64,000 bases of DNA, from the IMG/VR virus record IMGVR_UViG_3300028654_000001, positions 434,001-498,000 of that record; one strand, 5' to 3'. The position numbers and the translations under genes are program-made. Below are positions 5,601 through 14,764 of the stretch, piece by piece (position 1 is the first letter of the stretch; the number at the start of each line of letters is the position of its first letter). The notes under the pieces are model-generated. The model did not search any database. It was not told the DNA's origin and saw only the letters and a program-made list of their open reading frames with translations.

Positions 5601-6554
5601 TCAGAGATTGCTGAGAATATCCGAAAAGTCAAAATCAGAGCTATCCGCAGGTTGAGTCTTTGGTGAGGTCTTATTAGCTTTGGTTTTCTTTGGCTCAACC
5701 GGAGACTGCTCTGGCTCTGTCTCGATAAATCTAACAAGATCTGGATCACTTGGGTCCACAAGATCCCCCTCAACACCGGCGGCAGCTGCTACCTTAGCAG
5801 GTTCTGATTTAGAGGCTGCTTGGGCTGTTTCCTCTATAATAGAAGAAAGTTCGACATCCGAGTCAACTTCGGGGTTAGGTACCTCTAAGTCAAAAGATGC
5901 GATTGCCGCTTGTAGATCAGGGTCTATATCCTCATCAACTACTTTTGGTATTGCTACCGAAGCGGGCTTCTGGGTAGAGATTGCAACAAGAGGAACCTCA
6001 TTCTTCATGAGGTTATTTAGTTCATCCTCATCAATAGTTGACGAACTCGGAGGCGGGTTACTACTCCCGTTTGACTCATCTCCATACCCAGCCCCGGTCA
6101 CACGATCAGCAAACAGCATCTGCCGTTGAGTCTTTATCTCACCAGAAGTGCGTATTAACTCATCATGAACCATTTTCACAGACTTCTCGACAGTCTCCAA
6201 ATCAAGAATCTCGCTCTTAAAAGCTGATATTGAGTTAACCCGATCTCGAAGAAGGGTGTTTACCAAAGCTTCGCGGTCTCGGATATTGGGCTGCCGCTTT
6301 ACATCCTCATTCTCTGATAGCAACCGATCCTTCTCTACACTGAAGAGGGTCTCCTCCCCTCCAAGCTTGCTCATCAGGTCTCGACGCATTCTGCTGAGGT
6401 TCAACCGAATACTCGATATCCTGTTCAAGTAGTTACGGCATTGAGCCATAATACTGTTGATGTAATTGGGGCCGAGTACCGTCGGATCCCGTTCCAACTC
6501 TAGGTGAAGGCCACCTACTTCGTTGAAGATCTTATCTACGAAGGCCTGATCCAT
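5601..6554 (-). CDS. Hypothetical coiled-coil protein with acidic tail (possible recombination mediator)
   Basis: 317-aa ORF, helical N half, tail DFDFSDILSNL resembling that of the SSB. Confidence 0.55.
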   Translation of the reverse strand: MDQAFVDKIFNEVGGLHLELERDPTVLGPNYINSIMAQCRNYLNRISSIRLNLSRMRRDLMSKLGGEETLFSVEKDRLLSENEDVKRQPNIRDREALVNTLLRDRVNSISAFKSEILDLETVEKSVKMVHDELIRTSGEIKTQRQMLFADRVTGAGYGDESNGSSNPPPSSSTIDEDELNNLMKNEVPLVAISTQKPASVAIPKVVDEDIDPDLQAAIASFDLEVPNPEVDSDVELSSIIEETAQAASKSEPAKVAAAAGVEGDLVDPSDPDLVRFIETEPEQSPVEPKKTKANKTSPKTQPADSSDFDFSDILSNL

Positions 6555-6577
6555 ATGGAAGGTTAGTACACCAGTGC

Positions 6578-8761
6578 CTACTCAGTTTTCGGCATCAGCT
6601 CTTGGATTGCTTTACCGAAGCCTGTATTCCTATGAATCACGTGATCGTTATTAATGGCCTTCTGAATTGAACCCCGGTCACCCAACAACCAAACCTTCTT
6701 CTTCGCCCTAGTAACAGCAGTGTAAAACAGGTTTCGTTGTAGCATTCTCCCGTGATTACGGACCATAGGAAGAATTACTGTGTCAAATTCACTACCCTGG
6801 CTCTTATGAACCGTTATGGCGTAAGCCAGCCGTAGCTTCTGGACAACATCATTGCGCGGGATCTCAACCTGAACATCAAGGCCCCCCTCGCCTATTCCGT
6901 GAATCCTAACCGTGAAGGAATCTGAACGAATAGTTATGAGTTTACCCATGTCCCCGTTGTAGATTCCTAAGGTGTAGTCATTCTTGATCACCATCAACCG
7001 ATCACCCTCACGAAATCGCAAGGTACCCATGGTAACCTCTTTTTTACCAGTGGTTGGTGGGTTCAAGACCTCACGAAGTTTGTCGTTCAGGTTGATTACC
7101 CCAACTGTCCCCTCATGTTTAGGTGAAAGAACCTGAAAGTTCTCATCACGACCCTTGAGCTTTTGAGCCATCATTACTACCAACTCAAGTATTTTAGTAT
7201 CCTCGAGTATGGGTACAAATCTGAAGTCTGAGGTGTCGCTCCCTATTACAATAGAATCACCCCTATTTATACGGTGAGAATTTAGAATGATCTCACTCTG
7301 CTGAGCCTGCCTGAAAATCTGAGTCAACCTGACCGTAGGGATTGAAGGGCAACGTACCAGCTCACGTAGGACATTCCCAGGCCCTACTGAGGGTAGTTGG
7401 GCATCATCCCCAACCAGAACCAAGATAGTACCTTCCTCGAGTGCGTCCAGAGTCCTGAAGAATAACTCTTGATCAACCATCGAACACTCGTCAATGATCA
7501 CAACCCCAATCGGATACTTGTTGAAAGCGTGGTACCCCCAGGTATCCCCGTTATACCTGAACGTCCTGTGTATAGTAGCCGCTGGACGACCCGTTACCGA
7601 AGCCATACGCTTCGCAGCAATCCCCGTTGGAGCCATCAAGGAGTAGGTCACCCCAGCTCGCTCAAACAGCTCCACAAAGGCTCTAGTAACCGTTGTCTTG
7701 CCTGTCCCTGGGCCACCCGTCAAAACCAAGACTCGGTTGTTGACTAATTTCTCCACAGCATCTTGTTGAGCATCGGACAGTTTGATCTGTCGTAGTGTCT
7801 CATAGGTCTCAAGAAATGCCTTGTAGTCAACATCAATCTTCAAAGGAGTTATGAATCTGACTAGGTATCTAGCTGAACCGCGCTCGTACTCATACAGACT
7901 AGGGAGGTAAACTCCAACCTCTGGATCAATACGAACCCCCTCACGTTCTTCCAACCGAGCAGTAGCCTTCATGAGGTCTTCGGACAGAGTGTCTCCATCA
8001 AACGGACAAATCTCAGTTGACTTGAGCATCTCGTTGAGTTGAGTTGCCATATCCCCACGTCGAACATACAAGTTTCCTGACTTAGAAGATTCGCGCAGTA
8101 CCCAAAGAACTGCACCCTCAAACCGCCGTGGATCATCCATCTCAAGTCCATTGGCTTGAGCTACTGAATCAGCCTTATCAAATGTAAAACCATCGACTTC
8201 GAGGAGTCGATAGGGGTTCTCAGAGATAATTCGCTTAGAATCAACCCCAAAGGTGCTGAAGAGGGCTGACATCTGCTCAGACGTAACATCGTGATCCGAA
8301 AGGAATGCCGATAAGTCTGAACTGGTCAATAACCCAGCCCAAGCAGTCACAACCCTCTGAATCAATTCTGGATCAAATCCAGGTAACTCAGCGAGTCTGT
8401 TTGGATCCTCACTTATAACCTTGAAGGTATCAATGCCAAAGGTATCAACCAGAGAGGCAGCTTGGAACTCATCAAGGACTTTGAAGCACCCATGTAGGAA
8501 GTTGTCTACTCCAACAACCGACGCCGCCCACGGTGCCCAACCATTGAAGTCAAACTGCCACCCATACTTGGCATTACGAACCCACTTTCCAAACAGCTCT
8601 ATCGGAATACCAGGGGCTATGCCTTCGAGTCCAAACAACCTGCCTTTACAGGTGATCTTACTACTACCATAGGTATCGGCTTCGCTCCGCTCAGCTGATA
8701 TAATGTAGAAATCATCCGTGTTATGGATGATACTATACACCAAGACACGGACAGATCCCAT
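6578..8761 (-). CDS. recD2: RecD2-like SF1B helicase
   Basis: ENPYRL HhH, GGPGTGKTT, DECSMVD, VGDDAQLPSVGPG, AYAITVHKSQGSEF, YTAVTRAK. Confidence 0.93.
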   Translation of the reverse strand: MGSVRVLVYSIIHNTDDFYIISAERSEADTYGSSKITCKGRLFGLEGIAPGIPIELFGKWVRNAKYGWQFDFNGWAPWAASVVGVDNFLHGCFKVLDEFQAASLVDTFGIDTFKVISEDPNRLAELPGFDPELIQRVVTAWAGLLTSSDLSAFLSDHDVTSEQMSALFSTFGVDSKRIISENPYRLLEVDGFTFDKADSVAQANGLEMDDPRRFEGAVLWVLRESSKSGNLYVRRGDMATQLNEMLKSTEICPFDGDTLSEDLMKATARLEEREGVRIDPEVGVYLPSLYEYERGSARYLVRFITPLKIDVDYKAFLETYETLRQIKLSDAQQDAVEKLVNNRVLVLTGGPGTGKTTVTRAFVELFERAGVTYSLMAPTGIAAKRMASVTGRPAATIHRTFRYNGDTWGYHAFNKYPIGVVIIDECSMVDQELFFRTLDALEEGTILVLVGDDAQLPSVGPGNVLRELVRCPSIPTVRLTQIFRQAQQSEIILNSHRINRGDSIVIGSDTSDFRFVPILEDTKILELVVMMAQKLKGRDENFQVLSPKHEGTVGVINLNDKLREVLNPPTTGKKEVTMGTLRFREGDRLMVIKNDYTLGIYNGDMGKLITIRSDSFTVRIHGIGEGGLDVQVEIPRNDVVQKLRLAYAITVHKSQGSEFDTVILPMVRNHGRMLQRNLFYTAVTRAKKKVWLLGDRGSIQKAINNDHVIHRNTGFGKAIQELMPKTE

Positions 8762-8763
8762 AG

Positions 8764-9555
8764 TTAGCCCCGTGCAAGTTCAAGGAACTCTTCTTCTGAC
8801 AAGCACTTGGTGCCATACTTCCTAGCAGTGGCAGCCTTATTCGTAGAAGTGTCAGACATAACAAGATAACTCAACTTTTTGGTGACTCCGGACTTTACCT
8901 CTCCGCCTTGGGACGTCACCATGTCTTCTAAGTCACCACGACTGTTAACCATCTCACCAGTGAAACAGAAGCTCTTCCCGGACAGCTTACCACGAATAGG
9001 TCCCTGTACTTTGACACCTACCGAAAGCAGTTCCTCTACCACACCACTCTGAGTCTTGATCCATTGGAAGATTGTCTCCGCCTTCACAACTCCTATACCG
9101 TTGATTTTACCTAGATCACTAGCGGTAGCAGACCGAAGCCTATCTAGATCATCATAACCATCAACCATCACAGTCTTTATGGTTGATACAGCAATTCCAG
9201 GAATACAAAGTGATCCGAGCATGGTATCGAGGGTGAGTACCTTCTTTTCATGCAGGAGATCTAAAGCCTTGGTGGCCGACGTATCACCCATTCGATCCAA
9301 ACCAGAGAGCTGCTCAACAGTAAGACGATACAAATCTGGAACCGATCTCACCAAACCAGTGGTTACTAGTTTCTCAATTAAAACGTCACCCCACTCGAGG
9401 ACCCCGAGGTTTGCGAGCCATTGGGATACCCGACCAATGATCTGGGCTGGACACCCTTCCTTGTTTGGGCAGATGTGGAACTCCCCATCTTGGATGACAG
9501 TAGATCCACAAGATAGACAGTTAACTGGGGGATAAAAGAACAAGTCAGTGCTCAT
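8764..9555 (-). CDS. ligA: NAD-dependent DNA ligase, C-terminal part (Zn finger, HhH, BRCT)
   Basis: CLSCG...CPNKEGC, DLYRLT, GIGVVKA, GKSFCFTG BRCT. Confidence 0.9.
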   Translation of the reverse strand: MSTDLFFYPPVNCLSCGSTVIQDGEFHICPNKEGCPAQIIGRVSQWLANLGVLEWGDVLIEKLVTTGLVRSVPDLYRLTVEQLSGLDRMGDTSATKALDLLHEKKVLTLDTMLGSLCIPGIAVSTIKTVMVDGYDDLDRLRSATASDLGKINGIGVVKAETIFQWIKTQSGVVEELLSVGVKVQGPIRGKLSGKSFCFTGEMVNSRGDLEDMVTSQGGEVKSGVTKKLSYLVMSDTSTNKAATARKYGTKCLSEEEFLELARG

Positions 9556-10360
9556 AATGGGTTATCTCCTTAGTTGACATTACGGGAGGGGTTTTATATG
9601 GATCGCTTAGATCCACCCAAGGTTCACCCGGTCCAACCCAAGGATGAATACCAACCTGCATCTCCATCCCATAGAGAACCCAAGAGGTTACTAAACAGGA
9701 GTTGAATCCTTTAACCGATACAAGATCATTGAGTGCCTTTTGTTTGGCTAGAGTCTTTGAATCCCACAACAAATAGTCAGCCTTAACTTCCCAAACTTCC
9801 TTGACCCCACCTACCAGAGTAACCAAAAAGTCTGGGATATAGATACGAGTAAACCCTTCGAACGAGTAGGGAATCTGGAAAGGCTCTACCTCTACTTTAG
9901 TAACCTGCGGGTGCAAGTCGAGTACTCTAACCAACCTAAGCTCCCAAGATGAACGTACCCAGGCTTTACCCCCAGGAAGCTTATCGCTTTTGGCGATAGC
10001 CCCATGACCAATAGATTTGACTCTTCCTTCCAAGTAGGCTCTGGAAACACCTATCGAGATCTTCTCTCGAATCTCAATAGTCCGGTCATACTTACCAGCA
10101 ACTCCAATACCCTTACCAGTTCTAGCAAGTTTCATCTTGACTATAGACATTGAGGAATGCCCAACCCCTCGAGTTGGGTTAGATCTAGTCATAAATCTGG
10201 ACTGTCTCAACCTCATCTCATCTGACTTCAAGAAAGTCAATTTGAAAGTAGATTTGAAGTCATCTACGGTATACCCGTGAAGTCTAATATGGTTAGTACT
10301 CAAGAAGTCTGTTACTTTGCCGCAGATAGGACAGGTTAGTTTAGCCATTGGGGTCCTCAC
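9545..10360 (-). CDS. TnsA-like PD-(D/E)XK free-standing endonuclease with N-terminal Zn finger and NUMOD-like repeats
   Basis: RSSWE, EPFQIPY, YIPDFLV, WEVK; CPICG...H...H. Confidence 0.8.
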   Translation of the reverse strand: MRTPMAKLTCPICGKVTDFLSTNHIRLHGYTVDDFKSTFKLTFLKSDEMRLRQSRFMTRSNPTRGVGHSSMSIVKMKLARTGKGIGVAGKYDRTIEIREKISIGVSRAYLEGRVKSIGHGAIAKSDKLPGGKAWVRSSWELRLVRVLDLHPQVTKVEVEPFQIPYSFEGFTRIYIPDFLVTLVGGVKEVWEVKADYLLWDSKTLAKQKALNDLVSVKGFNSCLVTSWVLYGMEMQVGIHPWVGPGEPWVDLSDPYKTPPVMSTKEITHYEH

Positions 10361-11462
10361 TGAGATTGGCTATAACCTTTGGAATAACATCTCCAGCTCG
10401 TACAACAAGGATCTTGCAACCTTTGAATAACCCAAGTTTTTGAATGTACCTCCAATTGTAAAGACTTGCATTCACTACTTTCACCCCAAGGAGATTAACT
10501 TCATCAAAGTTGGCAACAGGAGTAATCCTTCCAGTGCTACCAGTCTGCCAAGTGATCCCTCTAAGAGTACTCTCCCTGGATACAGGAGCGAATTTAAAGG
10601 CTATGGCTCCAATAGGGCGCATGTCCTTCTCGCCTAGAGCAAATTGCTTGTTCAGATCGTTGACCCCTATTACCAACCCGTCAATATCGTAGTCAATCTG
10701 ATCTCTCTTGGTCTTCTGGTACTCAACCCAAACATCCTGAGGGGTACGCGAAGACGTCCACCAGGGAGTCGACAACCCAAGACTCTCGATGAACTGGTAT
10801 TGCTGCTCTTCGGTAAGAGGGGTCGCTAATGAGTAGGTAGGGGGGACCTTCCCATGAATAGTAAGCTTGTAGAACAAAACTGTGAGGTGTTCACACCCGC
10901 GGCCGTCATACCGCTTGGCAAGCCCAGAAGCAGCATTCCTTGTATTGGCATAGACATCCTTGAAGTGGGCCGCAAGGTCACTTCTTCGAAGTATGACCTC
11001 CCCACGGACTGAACAAGAGATCTTCCCAGGAATCTGGTCTGGGACCCCCTTCATCCTCTTTGCATTGACCGTAATGTCCTCACCAATTTTACCATCCCCA
11101 CGGGTCACAGCTTGAGTCAACTTGCCATTGACGTACTTGACCTTGAGAGAGATCCCATCCAGCTTCTCGGAGATGACAACCTTCCCGTCGGGAGCGTAGG
11201 TCTGAAGCCAATCAGCTATCTCCTCTGGGGTGTTCACCTTGTTGAGGGACCCCATGGGGGTGTCGTGCTTGACCTTCAGCCACTCGGAGACAGGGGGAGA
11301 CCCGACTTCAGCTAGAATGGAGCTGAAGGCGTCTAGATCGTTTAGCTCATCCACCCAAGCATCGAAGACCTCATCGGAAACTGTAGGGGTCTTATTGTAG
11401 TAGTCATCACGGGCTTTCTTGATGAGCCCCTGGAGCTCAATAATCCGATCTTCATCAGCCAT
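10341..11462 (-). CDS. ligA: NAD-dependent DNA ligase, N-terminal part (adenylation and OB domains)
   Basis: SDEVFD, PMGSL, EKLDG, TRGDG, RGEV, RNAASG, DGLV, AFKF, TGRITPV, RAGDVIPKV. Confidence 0.93.
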   Translation of the reverse strand: MADEDRIIELQGLIKKARDDYYNKTPTVSDEVFDAWVDELNDLDAFSSILAEVGSPPVSEWLKVKHDTPMGSLNKVNTPEEIADWLQTYAPDGKVVISEKLDGISLKVKYVNGKLTQAVTRGDGKIGEDITVNAKRMKGVPDQIPGKISCSVRGEVILRRSDLAAHFKDVYANTRNAASGLAKRYDGRGCEHLTVLFYKLTIHGKVPPTYSLATPLTEEQQYQFIESLGLSTPWWTSSRTPQDVWVEYQKTKRDQIDYDIDGLVIGVNDLNKQFALGEKDMRPIGAIAFKFAPVSRESTLRGITWQTGSTGRITPVANFDEVNLLGVKVVNASLYNWRYIQKLGLFKGCKILVVRAGDVIPKVIANLSEDPNG

Positions 11463-11465
11463 GGC

Positions 11466-11768
11466 TTAGTTGGCCTCAGACTTACGTGGGTCAAGTACAA
11501 CAACCGGACTCGGCGAGGTCTCAAGCTTATTTGCATACTCCTCTAGGGTTGTCACAGAAGCCAGCGGAGTAATGATCAACCTAACCTCTTGACCCTTGAG
11601 GTGGGCAATAGCTGGAATTGGGTCGAACGAGAGTGGGTTTCCTTGTTGGTCAACAGTTCTAATCGTGACCCTGTCGTCCATGGGATCGATCTCGACAATT
11701 CCTTCTACGAGATGAATGTTGAGCGCCTTGAAGTCCAGCTTGTTTTCATCAGCCACGGATGTCTCCAA
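11466..11768 (-). CDS. Hypothetical protein
   Basis: Co-oriented 100-aa ORF abutting the ligase start. Confidence 0.6.
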   Translation of the reverse strand: METSVADENKLDFKALNIHLVEGIVEIDPMDDRVTIRTVDQQGNPLSFDPIPAIAHLKGQEVRLIITPLASVTTLEEYANKLETSPSPVVVLDPRKSEAN

Positions 11769-11826
11769 AATGAGGAAAGCCCCCTCCTAGTAACACCGGG
11801 AGGGGACTTTACCTGAGATAAATTCG

Positions 11827-13770
11827 TCATCTTATCGGGCATACACCCGAACTGCACTCCTCAGCTTCCATATCTCCGCCACGTACCAGCGGATGGTCAT
11901 GTTGGATCTGAGCGTAGAGTTCTTCATATATATCTTTGCTTACGCTTTCATAGGGTGGCTGTGCATAACCATGAACTTTTGGCAAAGTCGAAGTACTCTT
12001 GAGATAAGGCACATACTCTTTAAGACAAGTGGCAAGTTCACCCCTCTCACTCTCCCCGAATGACAGAGTAGCCGAGACAGCATTGTCTGCCCAGGACTCT
12101 TGAACAGCCTTCTGTCGGTCGAACTGATCCCGAATGGTCTCAGTCTGAACAGTTACCTTTGCATCTGACTTCATTGGAAATGCAAAGGCCCAAGTATGCC
12201 CGCTATTGTCGTAGATGTCATCTTCGAAGGGAACACCTGCTTCCATCATGGCAAGCGCCATTGGGTCATTCTTGGCAATCCTAGTTCTACGAATGTAATA
12301 AGGGGCGTAGGCAGCATGGATGCCTGGACTCGAGCCATTGAGAAGAGATATAGTTCCGGAAGGCTTAACAGTGGTGACCGCAATCGGGTCACTAACCCCA
12401 AGCTCCTTCGAGTATGAAGTTGCCTCATCCCTGCAGAGTTGGTACCAACGGCTGAGTTGGTTGTTGGTCCAATCGAAGTCACAGAGACCCCCGAGACCAA
12501 CCCCAACACGCATGTTCTGCTTTTGAACTGTGTCAGCCTTTAGGTCAGACAACGGAGTTAGCCTCTGCCGTAGGCAGTATCTGGTGATCAGTCGGAACAC
12601 CAAGTCTGAATCAGTCGAATCTTCGAACTTAGCTGGGAAAACTTCAGCAAGGTTACAAGCTTCACGATCATGAAGTGGAACCTCACCACAGGGGTTAACG
12701 CCTTTCGCACCAGGATCAGTTTTCCATACCAATGGTAGATTCAGTATACCTGGCTCACCACTGCCATTCTCGGCCATATCAGCAACAAGTGAATCCCAAT
12801 CGAAGTTCTGTAGCTGTTCCCAAGATCTGAAAGCAATCGAGTTGTTCGAAGTATGGCGGTGAGAGATCACCATATCCATATCCTTCTTAGCATCACGGAA
12901 AGCTTGGTCATAAGCATCTCCGATTGTAATCAAAGCAGATCTACGAACGTTACCAGCCTTAATGCAAAGACCGATATAGTTGGTGATGTCGAGAGCTTCA
13001 ACACTATTAACCCGTCGACCAGCTGCTCCACGTACAATCGACCATGCATTGCGTAGAAGCTTAGTAAGTGGTCCAGGGCCGCAAGCAATTCCACCGAAGG
13101 TTCTAATTGGTAGCCCTCGAGCTCTAACTTCAGATACATCAATTATTAAGTCTTTTGCGTTGAAAGCAGAGGACAGGACTGTTCGAAGAGCCTCTACCCA
13201 ACCCTCACGTGAGTCAGGAACCTTGAATATGGGTGTTTGCCCGTTGAGAAACTCTTTTGGTTCAGGGCTTACTTCAGAGATATTTTCGTGAGTCTCTGAA
13301 CAATGAACTGCAAAACGAACTGCTGGTGTTCGCTGAACTACTGGTAGAGCGTCGACCTCATTCAGCCCAACCCCTACCCCGCCTCCGAGCATTAGTTGAT
13401 TGGCAGTCCAGCACCAATCATCGATCCCGTAGAGGGTTGTGTACCAGCAGTTGTACCGAGCATCCGCCGGAATACCCTCGACCCCACCAGTCCATAAACC
13501 ACGCCCAGGAGGAAGAGCCTGACCCGTCCAGAATAGATGAAAGAGACTCTTGGCTTCACTCTCATTTGTGGAAGCTGCCAACGAGAGATTGGACTCAACA
13601 ACTCTCCGAATGGTATCCGTCCAGGTCTCGTTATCCCTGCAGTACTTCGTCAGGTATGTTGACCTAGCGAGCAGACTCTGAAATGGATCCCCTTTTCTAT
13701 AGTAAGGGCTCAGAAAGTCTACAGAAAAGTGATACCTGGTTGGTTTCAGAGTGGCATTTACGATCAACAT
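11827..13770 (-). CDS. nrdJ: Class II (B12-dependent) ribonucleotide reductase
   Basis: PPGRGLW, YNC, GGGVG, DSREGW, GNVRRSA, NPCGE, CNLAE, TVKPSGT, C-terminal CSSGVCPIR. Confidence 0.92.
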   Translation of the reverse strand: MLIVNATLKPTRYHFSVDFLSPYYRKGDPFQSLLARSTYLTKYCRDNETWTDTIRRVVESNLSLAASTNESEAKSLFHLFWTGQALPPGRGLWTGGVEGIPADARYNCWYTTLYGIDDWCWTANQLMLGGGVGVGLNEVDALPVVQRTPAVRFAVHCSETHENISEVSPEPKEFLNGQTPIFKVPDSREGWVEALRTVLSSAFNAKDLIIDVSEVRARGLPIRTFGGIACGPGPLTKLLRNAWSIVRGAAGRRVNSVEALDITNYIGLCIKAGNVRRSALITIGDAYDQAFRDAKKDMDMVISHRHTSNNSIAFRSWEQLQNFDWDSLVADMAENGSGEPGILNLPLVWKTDPGAKGVNPCGEVPLHDREACNLAEVFPAKFEDSTDSDLVFRLITRYCLRQRLTPLSDLKADTVQKQNMRVGVGLGGLCDFDWTNNQLSRWYQLCRDEATSYSKELGVSDPIAVTTVKPSGTISLLNGSSPGIHAAYAPYYIRRTRIAKNDPMALAMMEAGVPFEDDIYDNSGHTWAFAFPMKSDAKVTVQTETIRDQFDRQKAVQESWADNAVSATLSFGESERGELATCLKEYVPYLKSTSTLPKVHGYAQPPYESVSKDIYEELYAQIQHDHPLVRGGDMEAEECSSGVCPIR

Positions 13771-13786
13771 CTTTGGCCGAGCTCCT

Positions 13787-14764
13787 TCAAGAGGCGAGAT
13801 CCAGTACAGCTAGCTCAATCAAAGTTCTTCGATGGCTAGTCCGCTTCAGGTCTACATCTAATTTACATAGGTTCTGCATTGCTTTGAGTAATCGAGCCAC
13901 AGTCTGCCTCTCAACTTGAGGAAGGAGTGACTTCTTGAATCGATATGGGTGCATACCAATACCGGCTGCAGCTTCATCGGGTGTGGCACCTTTATCTATC
14001 ATTGACCGAGCCACAAATATTCTCTCTACACCCTTGATGAGAGCCCCAAGAATCATTAGAGATGGATCGTCCACTGCATACCGATACAGATCAGACAGCA
14101 TGGATAGTGCCTTCTTAGGGGATCTCATGAAAGCAGCTTCAGCAACATCCCAGGATTCAACAGTGCTAGTTGGTGTCATCACCAACCTAAGGTGATCAAC
14201 TGTAACAGTACCCTTACCAACTAGTAACTTCAGCTTACCTAGCTCACTCGAAAGTCTGTATAGATCACCACCATCAACTTGAAACATTGCTTTGGCAAGT
14301 TGAATATTCAGGTCAAGTCTGATCCGACTAGCCTCTTCCGAGATCCACTTCACTACTTCGTTCTTATCGTCCCAGGTTTTGAACTTCTTGTGCTCAAGGA
14401 GTGTAACCCTAGATCCAAGTTTAGTCCAAAAGGCTGGTACAGACGCGGCTCTCACCACAACTGCCAACACAGATGAAACGTCAGTAGCATCCCGGCCTTC
14501 TAAGTAAGACTTGAGATACTTGTCTGGCTTGATCTTGTGACCGTTATCCAACACAACAACACGAGGTTGAATGTTAGTAGGATCATCATAGTCAATGTGG
14601 TAAGTCTCACACGCTCCGACAACTGTTGCTTCATTTACTAAGGCACCATCCAACCTAGTAATTGCATAACCCTTCTGGTCACGGAACGCATTCAAATCTC
14701 GGTCTAATAGAAAGGGCTCCTCTCCAAAAGACACGACTACTGGGGTTGTGAACCTATATCCCAT
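13787..14764 (-). CDS. holA: DNA polymerase III delta (HolA)-like clamp-loader subunit
   Basis: FGEEPFL, ELGKLKL, GMHPYR, LCKLDVDLK pattern; adjacent to delta'. Confidence 0.8.
   Translation of the reverse strand: MGYRFTTPVVVSFGEEPFLLDRDLNAFRDQKGYAITRLDGALVNEATVVGACETYHIDYDDPTNIQPRVVVLDNGHKIKPDKYLKSYLEGRDATDVSSVLAVVVRAASVPAFWTKLGSRVTLLEHKKFKTWDDKNEVVKWISEEASRIRLDLNIQLAKAMFQVDGGDLYRLSSELGKLKLLVGKGTVTVDHLRLVMTPTSTVESWDVAEAAFMRSPKKALSMLSDLYRYAVDDPSLMILGALIKGVERIFVARSMIDKGATPDEAAAGIGMHPYRFKKSLLPQVERQTVARLLKAMQNLCKLDVDLKRTSHRRTLIELAVLDLAS

What the first reader, a model, noticed from the sequence alone, without database searches (positions are those of the whole stretch)
8764..11462. NAD-dependent DNA ligase split into two genes by a free-standing endonuclease
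Seen: LigA is cut in the linker between the OB fold (GDVIPKV...) and the Zn finger (FYPPVNCLSC). A TnsA-like nuclease ORF fills the gap and overlaps both halves, leaving no non-coding room for an intron, and there are no intein motifs. Both halves look intact. Known precedent: mobE splitting nrdA in phage Aeh1. Inference: a two-subunit ligase created by nuclease invasion.
Basis: partly seen in the sequence, partly recalled or inferred. Interest (0 to 1): 0.7.

Follow-up and report, generated by a model that had tools for sequence, protein, structure and literature searches.

The report
Homing nuclease splits megaphage DNA ligase
In a 512-kb soil phage, a selfish nuclease gene has inserted precisely into the NAD-dependent DNA ligase gene and cut it into two separately translated halves; this is a new example of the known "genes in pieces" effect, and close relatives with and without the insertion are available for comparison.

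Summary
On the minus strand lie LigA-N (10341-11462; adenylation and OB domains), a nuclease with a TnsA-like fold (9545-10348) and LigA-C (8764-9555; Zn finger, HhH, BRCT). The three ORFs use three different frames and overlap by 8 and 11 nt. The closest relatives (88%, 84% and 67% identical) carry an uninterrupted 630-aa ligA in the same gene order, so a cassette of about 791 nt was inserted.

All seven nuclease homologs whose context I examined (68-41% identity) sit at this same ligA site, in otherwise different phage neighbourhoods. On a LigA tree the split alleles are scattered, each next to an intact sister. They all share one flanking signature that their intact sisters lack. In the window this flanking tract is about 370 nt of ligA and is foreign to its L005-like backbone (p about 6e-12). 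I read it as co-conversion during homing.

The cassette supplies a stop codon for the N half, its own ATG, and a Shine-Dalgarno sequence that restarts translation of the C half. In a split-split pair, dN/dS is 0.07-0.12 for both halves and for the nuclease. A complex model places the OB domain against the Zn finger (0.65 against 0.01 for controls).

No intron or intein signal was found. T5-like phages already have a LigA split at the same point. Cleavage and ligation have not been tested.

The parts
10341..11462 (-). ligA N-terminal half (373 aa): Ia region, adenylation (nucleotidyltransferase) domain with KxDG lysine K100, and OB fold. It ends 6-9 residues after the RAGDVIPKV motif.
   Evidence: The invariant catalytic columns E99, K100, D102, G103, R121, E155 and K290 are all present in the window row of alignment A2.
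9545..10348 (-). Free-standing nuclease gene (267 aa from the ATG at 10348). It has an N-terminal CxxC...H...H zinc finger of Ros/MucR type, NUMOD3-like DNA-binding repeats, and a C-terminal PD-(D/E)xK nuclease domain with a TnsA-like fold (E136, P172-D173, E187-x-K189).
   Evidence: Pfam PF08722 in 20 of 20 family members, NUMOD3 in 10 of 20, ROS_MUCR in 7 of 20. Invariant residues. AF2 model with pLDDT 83.7. Best Foldseek PDB hits are TnsA 1t0f/1f1z, E 7e-7.
8764..9555 (-). ligA C-terminal half (263 aa): Cys4 zinc finger (C13, C16, C29, C35), HhH domain and BRCT domain.
   Evidence: Invariant columns of alignment A3.
9558..10348 (-). Inserted cassette, about 791 nt, borders good to about 2 nt. 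It is absent from intact alleles and is entirely coding for the nuclease. Its 5' end creates the stop codon of the N half (TAA 10341-10343). The nuclease reading frame only stops (TGA 9545-9547) inside native ligA sequence.
   Evidence: Nucleotide alignment with the intact alleles L014 and L005 and the split alleles L006 and L007.
9566..9571 (-). Shine-Dalgarno AAGGAG inside the 3' end of the nuclease ORF, 10 nt upstream of the ligA-C start ATG (9553-9555). In the intact allele L014 the corresponding codon is an internal GTG (Val).
   Evidence: A purine-rich SD plus a start codon overlapping or abutting the nuclease stop is present in all six split loci.
10354..10358 (-). GAGGA ribosome-binding site 5 nt upstream of the nuclease ATG (10346-10348), lying within the last codons of ligA-N.
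9468..10631 (-). Mosaic (co-conversion-like) tract: the cassette plus about 280 nt of ligA upstream and about 90 nt downstream. In this stretch the window stops resembling its L005-like backbone and resembles other split alleles instead (signature LFKGCKIL..RAGDVIPKV.ANLS).
   Evidence: Inside the tract there are 46 split-like and 24 L005-like informative sites; outside there are 58 and 212. Fisher p = 6e-12 for the best window, not corrected for the scan. The signature is shared by split alleles and absent from their intact sisters.

Best explanation
A compact, free-standing homing-endonuclease cassette of about 791 nt has inserted into the linker between the OB fold and the zinc finger of the phage's only NAD-dependent DNA ligase gene. 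The enzyme it encodes has a zinc finger, NUMOD3 repeats and a PD-(D/E)xK nuclease domain with a TnsA-like fold.

Inferred mechanism of spread: in a mixed infection the nuclease cuts the uninterrupted ligA of a related phage near this site. Repair from the nuclease-bearing genome then copies in the cassette together with a few hundred bases of flanking ligA.

The cassette appears built to do little harm. Its first bases create a stop codon for the upstream half, it carries its own ATG, and its last bases carry a Shine-Dalgarno sequence that restarts translation at a ligA codon. The locus therefore becomes three tightly overlapping cistrons: ligA-N, nuclease, ligA-C.

The two ligase polypeptides then reassemble without a covalent link, through the OB/zinc-finger packing that intact LigA has within one chain. 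This would restore a clamp-like enzyme in which the N half adenylates and seals and the C half binds DNA.

Shown here: the insertion, its borders, its presence/absence among relatives, its restriction to this site, the mosaic flanks, the conserved translation signals, and purifying selection. Inferred: DNA cleavage, the homing pathway, and ligase activity of the two-piece enzyme.
For: (1) The closest relatives carry an intact 630-aa ligA in the same RNR / small ORF / ligA / RecD-helicase order: L005 at 88%, L013 at 84%, L004 at 67%.
(2) Exact borders come from an intact allele with matching flanks (L014...ANLSRGTL|VNSDLFFQPP...) aligned to L006, L007 and the window.
(3) Seven of seven nuclease homologs examined (68-41% identity) lie between LigA-N and LigA-C in contigs with different neighbouring genes.
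(4) On a LigA tree built from residues 1-285, outside the tract, nine split alleles need 6-7 state changes. Five of them pair with an intact sister; support reaches both cut-offs for four pairs (window P0049 with P0050 99/93; P0055 with P0062 100/97; P0093 with P0108 100/87; P0148 with P0110 100/98), while P0054 with P0071 is 97/77.
(5) Five split alleles of this clade, the window included, share the flank signature RAGDVIPK. 89 of 114 intact alleles have RANDVIPR, including three of those intact sisters (P0050, P0062 and, as RANDVVPR, P0073); P0071 and P0108 read RANDVIPK. The window's tract is significantly mosaic.
(6) There is no Rfam intron hit, the ORFs use three frames, there is no Hint domain, and no non-coding DNA lies within the insert.
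(7) Stop/start overlaps and an SD before the C half are conserved in all six split loci.
(8) For the split-split pair L006-L007, dN/dS is 0.066 (N half), 0.093 (nuclease) and 0.121 (C half), with dS 1.1-1.6. All catalytic and zinc-binding residues are retained.
(9) The complex model scores 0.65 (three runs: 0.63-0.68) against 0.01 for the best of 3 controls. In the tool's calibration that mark was reached by 58 of 80 solved complexes and 2 of 110 mismatched pairs; the counts hold only roughly because my own alignments were used. Runs agree in at least 55% of contacts and partner pLDDT is at least 83. The interface is OB residues 302-348 with zinc-finger residues 4-45.
(10) This is the only ligA and the only copy of this nuclease in the 512,571-bp genome.
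Against: There is no biochemical evidence: neither cleavage by the nuclease nor nick sealing by the two halves has been tested. No RNA data exist for this phage.

The complex score may simply reflect the model's memory of solved single-chain LigA structures, as the tool itself warns. The host's own LigA could cover for a dead phage ligase, although the low dN/dS argues against that.

dS is above 1, so the dN/dS values are rough. The tract p-value comes from a scanned best window; after correcting for about 6e4 windows it is still roughly 4e-7.

The donor allele has not been found: the nearest nuclease is only 68% identical. One intact allele with split-type flanks (P0057/L014) could be either a product of precise loss or the ancestral target, and I cannot tell which.
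Confidence: 0.8

Rival explanations
1. The insert is a group I or group II intron carrying the nuclease ORF. The intron is spliced from the mRNA, so a single full-length LigA is made.
For: Many phage homing endonucleases are intron-encoded. The insertion lies in a conserved gene at a domain linker.
Against: A permissive Rfam search of 8000-12000 finds no intron family. The whole 791-nt insert is nuclease coding sequence, with no non-coding core. The insert creates a stop codon for the N half. All six split loci keep an SD and a start codon for the C half, which a spliced gene would not need. The intact-allele comparison shows the borders fall at translation signals, not at intron-like splice contexts.
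Confidence: 0.03
2. The phage ligase is a decaying pseudogene. The insertion killed ligA, the phage relies on the host's LigA, and the two halves are leftovers.
For: Bacterial hosts all have LigA. No activity data exist. In relative L013 the ligA is frameshifted near the BRCT domain.
Against: Both halves stay open with every catalytic and zinc-binding residue retained. dN/dS is 0.07 and 0.12 over a divergence with dS above 1 between two split genomes. The split arrangement persists in lineages whose nucleases are only 41-68% identical. The restart signals are conserved.
Confidence: 0.07
3. The nuclease is no longer mobile. It has been domesticated, for example as an exclusion nuclease against competing phages or as a repair or packaging factor, and the split arrangement is simply inherited vertically.
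For: The nuclease is under purifying selection (dN/dS 0.09), whereas a fixed selfish nuclease gene is expected to decay. In the L006-L007 pair the nuclease and its flanks show similar dS, which fits co-inheritance in that pair.
Against: Split alleles are scattered among intact sisters on the LigA tree and carry a shared foreign flank. That requires repeated horizontal movement of the cassette with its flanks. Exclusion of competitors and homing are not mutually exclusive.
Confidence: 0.08
4. The insert is a split intein or a Tn7-like transposon rather than a homing endonuclease cassette.
For: The Pfam hit is to the TnsA N-terminal domain. Relative L009 does have Hint/intein hits elsewhere in its ligA.
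Against: At this junction the N half ends 6-9 residues after the OB fold and the C half begins about 10 residues before the zinc finger, which leaves no room for intein halves. Neither half has a Hint hit. The insert is a single 267-aa ORF with no TnsB/TnsC genes, and there is no other copy in the genome. Insertion is always at the same ligA codon in different phages.
Confidence: 0.02

Closest known systems
mobE insertion in nrdA of Aeromonas phage Aeh1 ('genes in pieces' ribonucleotide reductase; Friedrich et al. 2007, as reviewed in PMC2988022). The same review describes mobA in T4 topoisomerase gene 39/60 and seg43(25) in gene 43 of phage 25.
   Same: A free-standing homing endonuclease gene sits inside an essential DNA-metabolism gene of a phage. 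The gene is split into two polypeptides that must reassemble, and related phages carry the uninterrupted gene.
   Different: The target is LigA rather than NrdA, topoisomerase or polymerase. The nuclease has a PD-(D/E)xK TnsA-like fold with a zinc finger and NUMOD3 repeats, not HNH or GIY-YIG. The cassette has no intergenic DNA at all: it makes the upstream stop and carries the SD for the downstream half. Function of the split enzyme was shown for Aeh1 and is only inferred here.
Two-subunit NAD-dependent DNA ligase of T5-like phages (ligA/ligB, AAU05253/AAU05254; PHROGs 3359 and 3498).
   Same: The break point is the same. In Salmonella phage L6jm, subunit A ends ...RAGGVIPCIVERVYD* just after the OB motif and subunit B starts MMKIEIPTQCPSCGS just before the zinc finger. 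The window's halves match these PHROGs at 2.7e-54 and 5.3e-29.
   Different: T5-like phages have about 200 nt of non-coding, promoter-like DNA between the halves and no nuclease gene. I found no remnant of this nuclease family there. The ligases are only about 29-33% identical to the window's. The origin of the T5 split is unknown.
I-Ssp6803I, the characterised PD-(D/E)xK homing endonuclease (PF11645; listed in PMC3424549).
   Same: A restriction-enzyme-like PD-(D/E)xK catalytic core used for homing.
   Different: I-Ssp6803I is intron-encoded in a tRNA gene, belongs to a different Pfam family, and has no NUMOD3 or zinc-finger modules. The window's enzyme is free-standing, and its nearest solved structure is TnsA.
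'Fractured genes' (Dassa et al. 2009, PMC2677866): a split intein plus a free-standing endonuclease gene inside phage replication genes, including one DNA ligase.
   Same: A free-standing endonuclease gene sits between two pieces of a phage DNA-metabolism gene, and the arrangement was found in metagenomes.
   Different: In fractured genes the halves carry split-intein parts and are rejoined by protein trans-splicing. Here there are no intein parts, so rejoining cannot be covalent. An arrangement that looks like a fractured gene does occur at a second, more N-terminal site of ligA in relative L009/L010.
Tn7 TnsA (PDB 1t0f, 1f1z).
   Same: The fold of the catalytic domain (Foldseek E 7e-7; Pfam PF08722).
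   Different: There is no TnsB/C/D, no TnsC-binding C-terminal domain, no transposon ends, a different N-terminal DNA-binding region, and a fixed insertion site in ligA.

Membership tests
Free-standing homing endonuclease gene (functional class) | The nuclease ORF is not embedded in an intron or intein | tested here: met
   No Rfam intron hit. The three ORFs use three different frames and there is no Hint domain. The insert is entirely ORF.
Free-standing homing endonuclease gene (functional class) | Presence/absence polymorphism at one and the same site among close relatives | tested here: met
   L005, L013, L004 and most of the 120 nearest LigA proteins are intact. Split alleles are scattered on the tree, needing 6-7 changes.
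Free-standing homing endonuclease gene (functional class) | Co-conversion of flanking host-gene sequence together with the nuclease gene | tested here: met
   Mosaic tract at 9468-10631. A flank signature is shared by split alleles and absent from their intact sisters.
Free-standing homing endonuclease gene (functional class) | Site-specific cleavage of the allele that lacks the nuclease gene, and resistance of the allele that carries it | not testable with these tools
   This needs purified enzyme and DNA substrates. So far there is only the inference that the flank differences (RANDVIPR against RAGDVIPK...ANLS) could confer immunity.
PD-(D/E)xK nucleases, TnsA-like N-terminal domain (PF08722) | Profile match above the curated cut-off, matching fold, and catalytic E...PD...ExK residues | tested here: met
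   32.7 bits against a cut-off of 26.5. All 20 family members match. E136, D173, E187 and K189 are invariant. TnsA is the top PDB hit, E 7e-7.
Tn7-like transposon (TnsA as part of a heteromeric transposase) | Partner genes tnsB/tnsC and transposon ends | tested here: not met
   The insert is one 267-aa ORF of about 791 nt. Its neighbours are the ligA halves, a helicase and RNR. It is single-copy in the genome.
NAD-dependent DNA ligase LigA | Ia, adenylation (KxDG), OB, Cys4 zinc finger, HhH and BRCT domains, all present and co-linear | tested here: met
   Pfam and PHROG coverage of 5-382 plus 392-651 out of 656 profile positions. Invariant catalytic and zinc-binding residues are present.
NAD-dependent DNA ligase LigA | A single polypeptide | tested here: not met
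   A stop codon at 10341-10343 and a separate start at 9553-9555 in another frame.
T5-type two-subunit LigA (PHROG 3359 + 3498) | Break between the OB fold and the zinc finger, with separate A and B genes | tested here: met
   phrog_3359 at 2.7e-54 and phrog_3498 at 5.3e-29. The break point is the same as in phage L6jm. Whether the two splits share an origin is not shown (one search found no remnant).
Group I / group II intron | A structured ribozyme core detectable by covariance models, with non-coding sequence | tested here: not met
   The only hit is a chance miRNA match at E 0.17 outside the insert. The insert contains no non-coding DNA.
Intein or split intein | An in-frame Hint domain, or N- and C-intein parts at the junction | tested here: not met
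   No Hint or Intein_splicing hits in any of the three ORFs at E up to 0.1. Only 6-10 residues lie beyond the conserved LigA domains at the junction.

The most novel reading that the evidence does not exclude
The zinc finger + NUMOD3 + TnsA-fold enzymes are a previously uncharacterised structural family of free-standing homing endonucleases dedicated to one codon position of phage ligA. Their cassette has evolved into a self-contained 'gene splitter' that supplies the stop, start and ribosome-binding signals. On this reading the split state is effectively neutral or even useful, for example by allowing separate control or separate roles for the sealing half and the DNA-binding/BRCT half. The long-known two-subunit ligase of T5-like phages would then be the fossil of an equivalent invasion.
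Probability: 0.3. Interest if true: 0.75.

Novelty: new variant of a known kind. Interest (0 to 1): 0.6.

Why it matters
Three things make this useful.

First, it offers a concrete and testable origin for split NAD-dependent ligases. These have been annotated in T5-like phages since 2005 without any explanation.

Second, it points to a homing-endonuclease architecture that has not been characterised: a PD-(D/E)xK core with a TnsA-like fold attached to NUMOD3 and Ros/MucR-type zinc-finger modules. It has a well-defined natural target, and cognate "empty", "occupied" and "probably reverted" alleles are all available. That is an unusually complete natural data set for studying target recognition, self-immunity and the gain-and-loss cycle of homing genes.

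Third, it shows how small such an element can be while still keeping its host gene working, since the stop, start and SD are all built into the ORF's ends. It also gives a natural design for a two-piece LigA that reassembles through the OB/zinc-finger interface.

It is not a new principle. Gene splitting by free-standing homing endonucleases is established from Aeh1 nrdA, T4 gene 39/60 and phage 25 gene 43.

Tried and rejected
- **Intron.** A permissive Rfam scan of 8000-12000 gave only a chance miRNA hit. Rejected.
- **Intein or split intein.** There are no Hint hits, the frames differ, and there is no room at the junction. Rejected.
- **Tn7-like element.** There are no partner genes, the ORF is single, and the site is fixed. 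Rejected.
- **Close cultured relatives.** Megablast of 8500-11800 against 50,697 phage records found nothing. The best protein matches to the N half are only 37% identical. tblastn of the nuclease against isolates found only distant nuclease-domain homologs (24-39%), none in a ligA context.
- **Paralogs.** There is no second copy of the nuclease or of ligA in the 512-kb genome.
- **Expression.** No RNA run holds this sequence. Read laying could only use DNA contigs, so nothing can be said about transcripts. No joined, nuclease-less form of this phage was seen in four other samples, but contigs drop rare variants, so this is weak evidence.
- **T5 link.** I searched the roughly 200-340 nt gap between ligase subunits A and B of phage L6jm for remnants of the nuclease family. 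The only hits were insignificant matches to the CPxCG of the ligase's own zinc finger, so common origin is unsupported.
- **Own promoter or terminator for the nuclease.** Consensus sites in 6400-14000 are no more frequent than in shuffled sequence.
- **dN/dS of window against L006/L007.** dS is saturated (about 2 or more, or undefined), so only the L006-L007 pair is usable.
- **Literature.** Searches for a published LigA-splitting homing endonuclease, or for a TnsA/NUMOD3 homing endonuclease, found none in the held library. That library is incomplete, so this is not proof of absence.
Full report
**What the window is.** The window is bases 434001-498000 of a 512,571-bp virus record with direct terminal repeats, that is, a complete "megaphage" genome. 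The sequence occurs in rhizosphere and soil metagenomes. Contigs from four further rhizosphere samples are identical to it over 8000-12500 and bridge both junctions of the feature.

**The observation.** Three consecutive minus-strand ORFs fill 8764-11462 without any gap.
- ORF 1 (10341-11462, 373 aa) has the LigA adenylation domain (1e-42) and OB fold (1e-21).
- ORF 2 (9545-10360 as listed; more likely from the ATG at 10348, 267 aa) matches the TnsA-like endonuclease N-terminal domain above Pfam's cut-off.
- ORF 3 (8764-9555, 263 aa) has the LigA zinc finger (weak match), HhH and BRCT domains.

Against the full-length phage LigA profile phrog_3869, the two halves cover positions 5-382 and 392-651 of 656, so together they make a complete ligase. 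The ORFs use three different frames. The overlaps are ATGGCTAA (LigA-N stop with nuclease start) and ATGAGCACTGA (LigA-C start with nuclease stop). GAGGA lies 5 nt before the nuclease ATG and AAGGAG 10 nt before the LigA-C ATG.

**It is an insertion.** A scan of viral contigs with LigA-N returned two relatives, L005 (88% identity) and L004 (67%). Both have an uninterrupted 630-aa ligA between the same class II ribonucleotide reductase, small ORF and RecD-like helicase. A third close relative, L013 (84%, on a 473-kb contig), is also uninterrupted at this site. Among the 120 nearest LigA proteins in the large protein collection, only about six are N-half-only. The rest are about 630 aa, many on contigs of 300-530 kb. 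Nucleotide alignment places the extra DNA at about 9536-10367.

**Exact borders and what the cassette carries.** One intact allele (P0057, locus L014, 635 aa) has the same flanking sequence as the split alleles, joined in frame (...ANLSRGTL|VNSDLFFQPP...). Aligning it with the split loci L006 and L007 and with the window fixes the borders to within about 2 nt. In L006, intact ...ACGC|TTGTGAAC... becomes ...ACTC|TATGACTATG...nuclease...GGAGCATA|TTGTGAAC....

Four consequences follow from these borders:
- The first bases of the insert create the stop codon of the N half.
- The insert carries the nuclease ATG.
- The last bases of the insert carry the SD.
- The C half restarts at what is an internal Val (GTG) codon in the intact gene (ATG in the window), and the nuclease frame stops only inside native ligA sequence.

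In the window the cassette is about 9558-10348 (791 nt), and all of it codes for the nuclease. The same layout is seen in all six split loci for which I had DNA, even where the nucleases are only 41-48% identical: the stop and start codons overlap or lie within 2 nt at both junctions, and a purine-rich SD precedes the C half.

**The nuclease family is specific for this site.** A search of about 5.8 billion proteins found 20 relatives (68-38% identity), all with PF08722. I looked up the genomic context of seven of them. Every one lies between a LigA-N gene (adenylation + OB) and a LigA-C gene (HhH + BRCT), although the surrounding genes differ from contig to contig: NAD kinase, peptide deformylase, a LAGLIDADG ORF, a metallophosphatase, or anaerobic or class II RNR. 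In cultured phages only distant homologs of the nuclease domain exist. Some of these lie beside other conserved genes, such as the major capsid protein in Bacillus phage SP-15 and the terminase large subunit in Pseudomonas phage PspYZU05, and none is in ligA.

**What the nuclease looks like.** The family alignment has these features:
- a CxxC...H...H motif at the N terminus;
- a GKGIGxxGKYxRT region;
- invariant E136, P172-D173-F174, E187 and K189, which form a classical E...PD...ExK active site.

Member-by-member Pfam scans give TnsA-like in 20 of 20, T7 endonuclease I in 11 of 20, NUMOD3 in 10 of 20 and Ros/MucR zinc finger in 7 of 20. The AlphaFold model (pLDDT 83.7) has its best PDB matches to TnsA (1t0f and 1f1z; E 7e-7 and 3e-6). 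Extended DNA-binding modules tethered to a small nuclease domain are the usual plan of free-standing phage homing endonucleases. That comparison rests on my own knowledge of I-TevI and I-HmuI-type enzymes and was not tested here.

**Evidence that the cassette moves and drags its flanks along.**
1. Along ligA, the window is 75-92% identical in nucleotides to L005 everywhere except about 80 codons upstream and 30-40 codons downstream of the insert. There identity falls to 54-70% and the window becomes as close or closer to the split alleles L006 and L007.
2. I counted sites where L006 = L007 but L005 differs. Inside codon columns 287-412 (window 10631-9468) the window sides with the split alleles at 46 sites and with L005 at 24. 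Outside it sides with them at 58 and 212 sites. Fisher p is 6e-12 for the best window, or roughly 4e-7 after allowing for the scan.
3. A maximum-likelihood tree was built from LigA residues 1-285, which lie outside the tract. On it, the nine split alleles need 6-7 changes of state. Five split alleles have an intact allele as nearest neighbour: window P0049 with P0050 (99/93), P0055 with P0062 (100/97), P0054 with P0071 (97/77, below the tool's second support cut-off), P0093 with P0108 (100/87), and P0148 with P0110 (100/98).
4. Despite their different backbones, five split alleles of this clade, the window included, carry LFKGC(K/R)IL..RAGDVIPKV..NLS next to the insert. Their intact sisters carry LD.G..(I/V)LVARANDVIP(R/K)VV. 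Overall 89 of 114 intact alleles have RANDVIPR and only two have the split-type motif.
5. One of those two is P0057, whose sister P0073 has the ordinary intact motif. P0057 is therefore best read as an allele that received the tract and then lost the nuclease gene precisely, or else as a descendant of the original target. I cannot distinguish the two.

Together these are the classic footprints of homing with co-conversion, and of a gain-and-loss cycle.

**Is the two-piece ligase functional?** This is inferred, not shown. Five lines of evidence bear on it:
- All invariant LigA residues are present in the window: motif I E99-K100-x-D102-G103, R121, E155, K290; zinc ligands C13, C16, C29, C35; the HhH and BRCT motifs.
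- Between two split genomes (L006 and L007) dN/dS is 0.066 for the N half, 0.121 for the C half and 0.093 for the nuclease, with dS of 1.1-1.6. Both halves and the nuclease have therefore been under purifying selection while split. dS is near saturation, so the ratios are approximate.
- The conserved overlaps and SD argue for coupled translation of the three cistrons. No excess of promoter-like or terminator-like sites interrupts the region.
- A complex prediction of the two halves scored 0.65 (three runs: 0.63-0.68) against 0.01 for the best of three controls. In the tool's calibration that mark was reached by 58 of 80 solved complexes and 2 of 110 mismatched pairs; those counts hold only roughly because my own alignments were used. 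The runs agree in at least 55% of contacts and partner pLDDT is at least 83. The confident interface joins OB residues 302-348 to zinc-finger residues 4-45 and HhH residues 117-120. Solved single-chain LigA structures exist, so this may be recall of the intramolecular domain packing. It shows that a ready-made interface exists, not that the halves bind.
- This is the only ligA in the genome.

**Rivals.**
- An intron is excluded as far as sequence can exclude it. There is no Rfam hit, there is no non-coding DNA, and the translation signals would be pointless in a spliced gene.
- Inteins are excluded by frame, by the absence of Hint domains, and by the 6-10 residue stubs at the junction.
- A Tn7-type element is excluded by the single ORF and the fixed site.
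- A dead ligase is unlikely given the selection data.
- A domesticated, immobile nuclease conflicts with the scattered distribution and the shared foreign flanks.

**Relation to what is known.** Splitting of essential phage genes by free-standing homing endonuclease genes is established: mobE in Aeh1 nrdA (where the split enzyme was shown to be active), mobA in T4 gene 39/60, and seg43(25) in gene 43 of phage 25 (PMC2988022). A two-gene LigA is annotated in T5 and its relatives (PMC3632103; PMC4319617). In phage L6jm the break is at the same point, with subunit A ending ...RAGGVIPCIVERVYD* and subunit B starting MMKIEIPTQCPSCGS. However, about 200 nt of promoter-like non-coding DNA lies between the subunits, with no nuclease gene, and I could detect no remnant of this nuclease family there.

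The characterised PD-(D/E)xK homing endonuclease, I-Ssp6803I, is intron-encoded and belongs to a different family (PMC3424549). I found no paper describing a LigA-splitting homing endonuclease or a TnsA-fold/NUMOD3 homing endonuclease, but the searchable library is incomplete.

**Verdict.** This is a new variant of a known kind. The target is new and its site is documented at single-codon resolution. The nuclease architecture is uncharacterised. The cassette is unusually economical. Several independent pairs of occupied and empty alleles are available for comparison. Cleavage, homing and ligase activity all remain to be tested at the bench.

Noticed in passing
L009:1443-3999 and L010:155-2711: In this more distant phage, ligA is broken a second time nearer the N terminus. 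A 215-aa ORF has Nlig-Ia plus weak Hint/Intein_splicing hits. It is followed by a 314-aa ORF with a faint MTES_1575 hit, and then by a 312-aa ORF with the adenylation and OB domains. After that come the TnsA-like nuclease and LigA-C. This looks like the 'fractured gene' arrangement (split intein plus free-standing endonuclease) of Dassa et al. 2009, giving a ligase in at least three pieces.
   Followed up: no
L006:1-2235: In the 465-kb relative that also has the split ligA, the class II ribonucleotide reductase is called as two ORFs (551 aa running off the locus, plus 389 aa), followed by a 304-aa HNH ORF. In the window the same enzyme is one 647-aa ORF (11827-13770). This may be a second gene disrupted by a homing endonuclease, or an intein, in that genome.
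   Followed up: no
L013:2682-3626 and L013:4001-5894: The 473-kb relative with 84% identical LigA has an extra 314-aa ORF of unknown function between the RNR gene and the small ORF. Its ligA is read as 574 + 76 aa because of a frame change just before the BRCT domain. This could be a real frameshift or an assembly error.
   Followed up: no
L014:3001-4908 (P0057): An intact 635-aa ligA carries the split-type flanks joined in frame, while its sister allele P0073 has ordinary flanks. It is a candidate product of precise loss of the nuclease gene, that is, the 'empty but possibly resistant' stage of the homing cycle.
   Followed up: partly
L017:1465-4456 (Pseudomonas phage Phabio, MF042360.1): The jumbo phage's LigA is annotated as two overlapping 'putative DNA ligase' CDSs (PHABIO_331 and PHABIO_332). 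The window's N half matches it in two pieces spread over 2.1 kb, which suggests a different interruption inside the adenylation/OB region.
   Followed up: no
window 9545-10348; phage records KT624200.1 and KY971610.1: Distant homologs of the nuclease domain in cultured phages sit beside the major capsid protein (Bacillus phage SP-15) and the terminase large subunit (Pseudomonas phage PspYZU05). The nuclease also hits PHROGs labelled 'head closure' (phrog_218, phrog_14892). Those labels are probably mis-annotations of free-standing endonucleases that lie next to head genes.
   Followed up: partly
window 11465-11502: The window has 38 nt between the 100-aa small ORF (11466-11768) and the ligA start that L005 lacks. 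In L005 the small ORF overlaps the ligA start codon.
   Followed up: no
window 1-64000 (G000:C1:434001-498000): The host genome is a complete 512.6-kb phage with terminal repeats from rhizosphere soil. Many of the nearest LigA relatives lie on contigs of 300-530 kb, so this appears to be a sizeable clade of soil megaphages with no close cultured relative (best isolate match 37% protein identity).
   Followed up: partly
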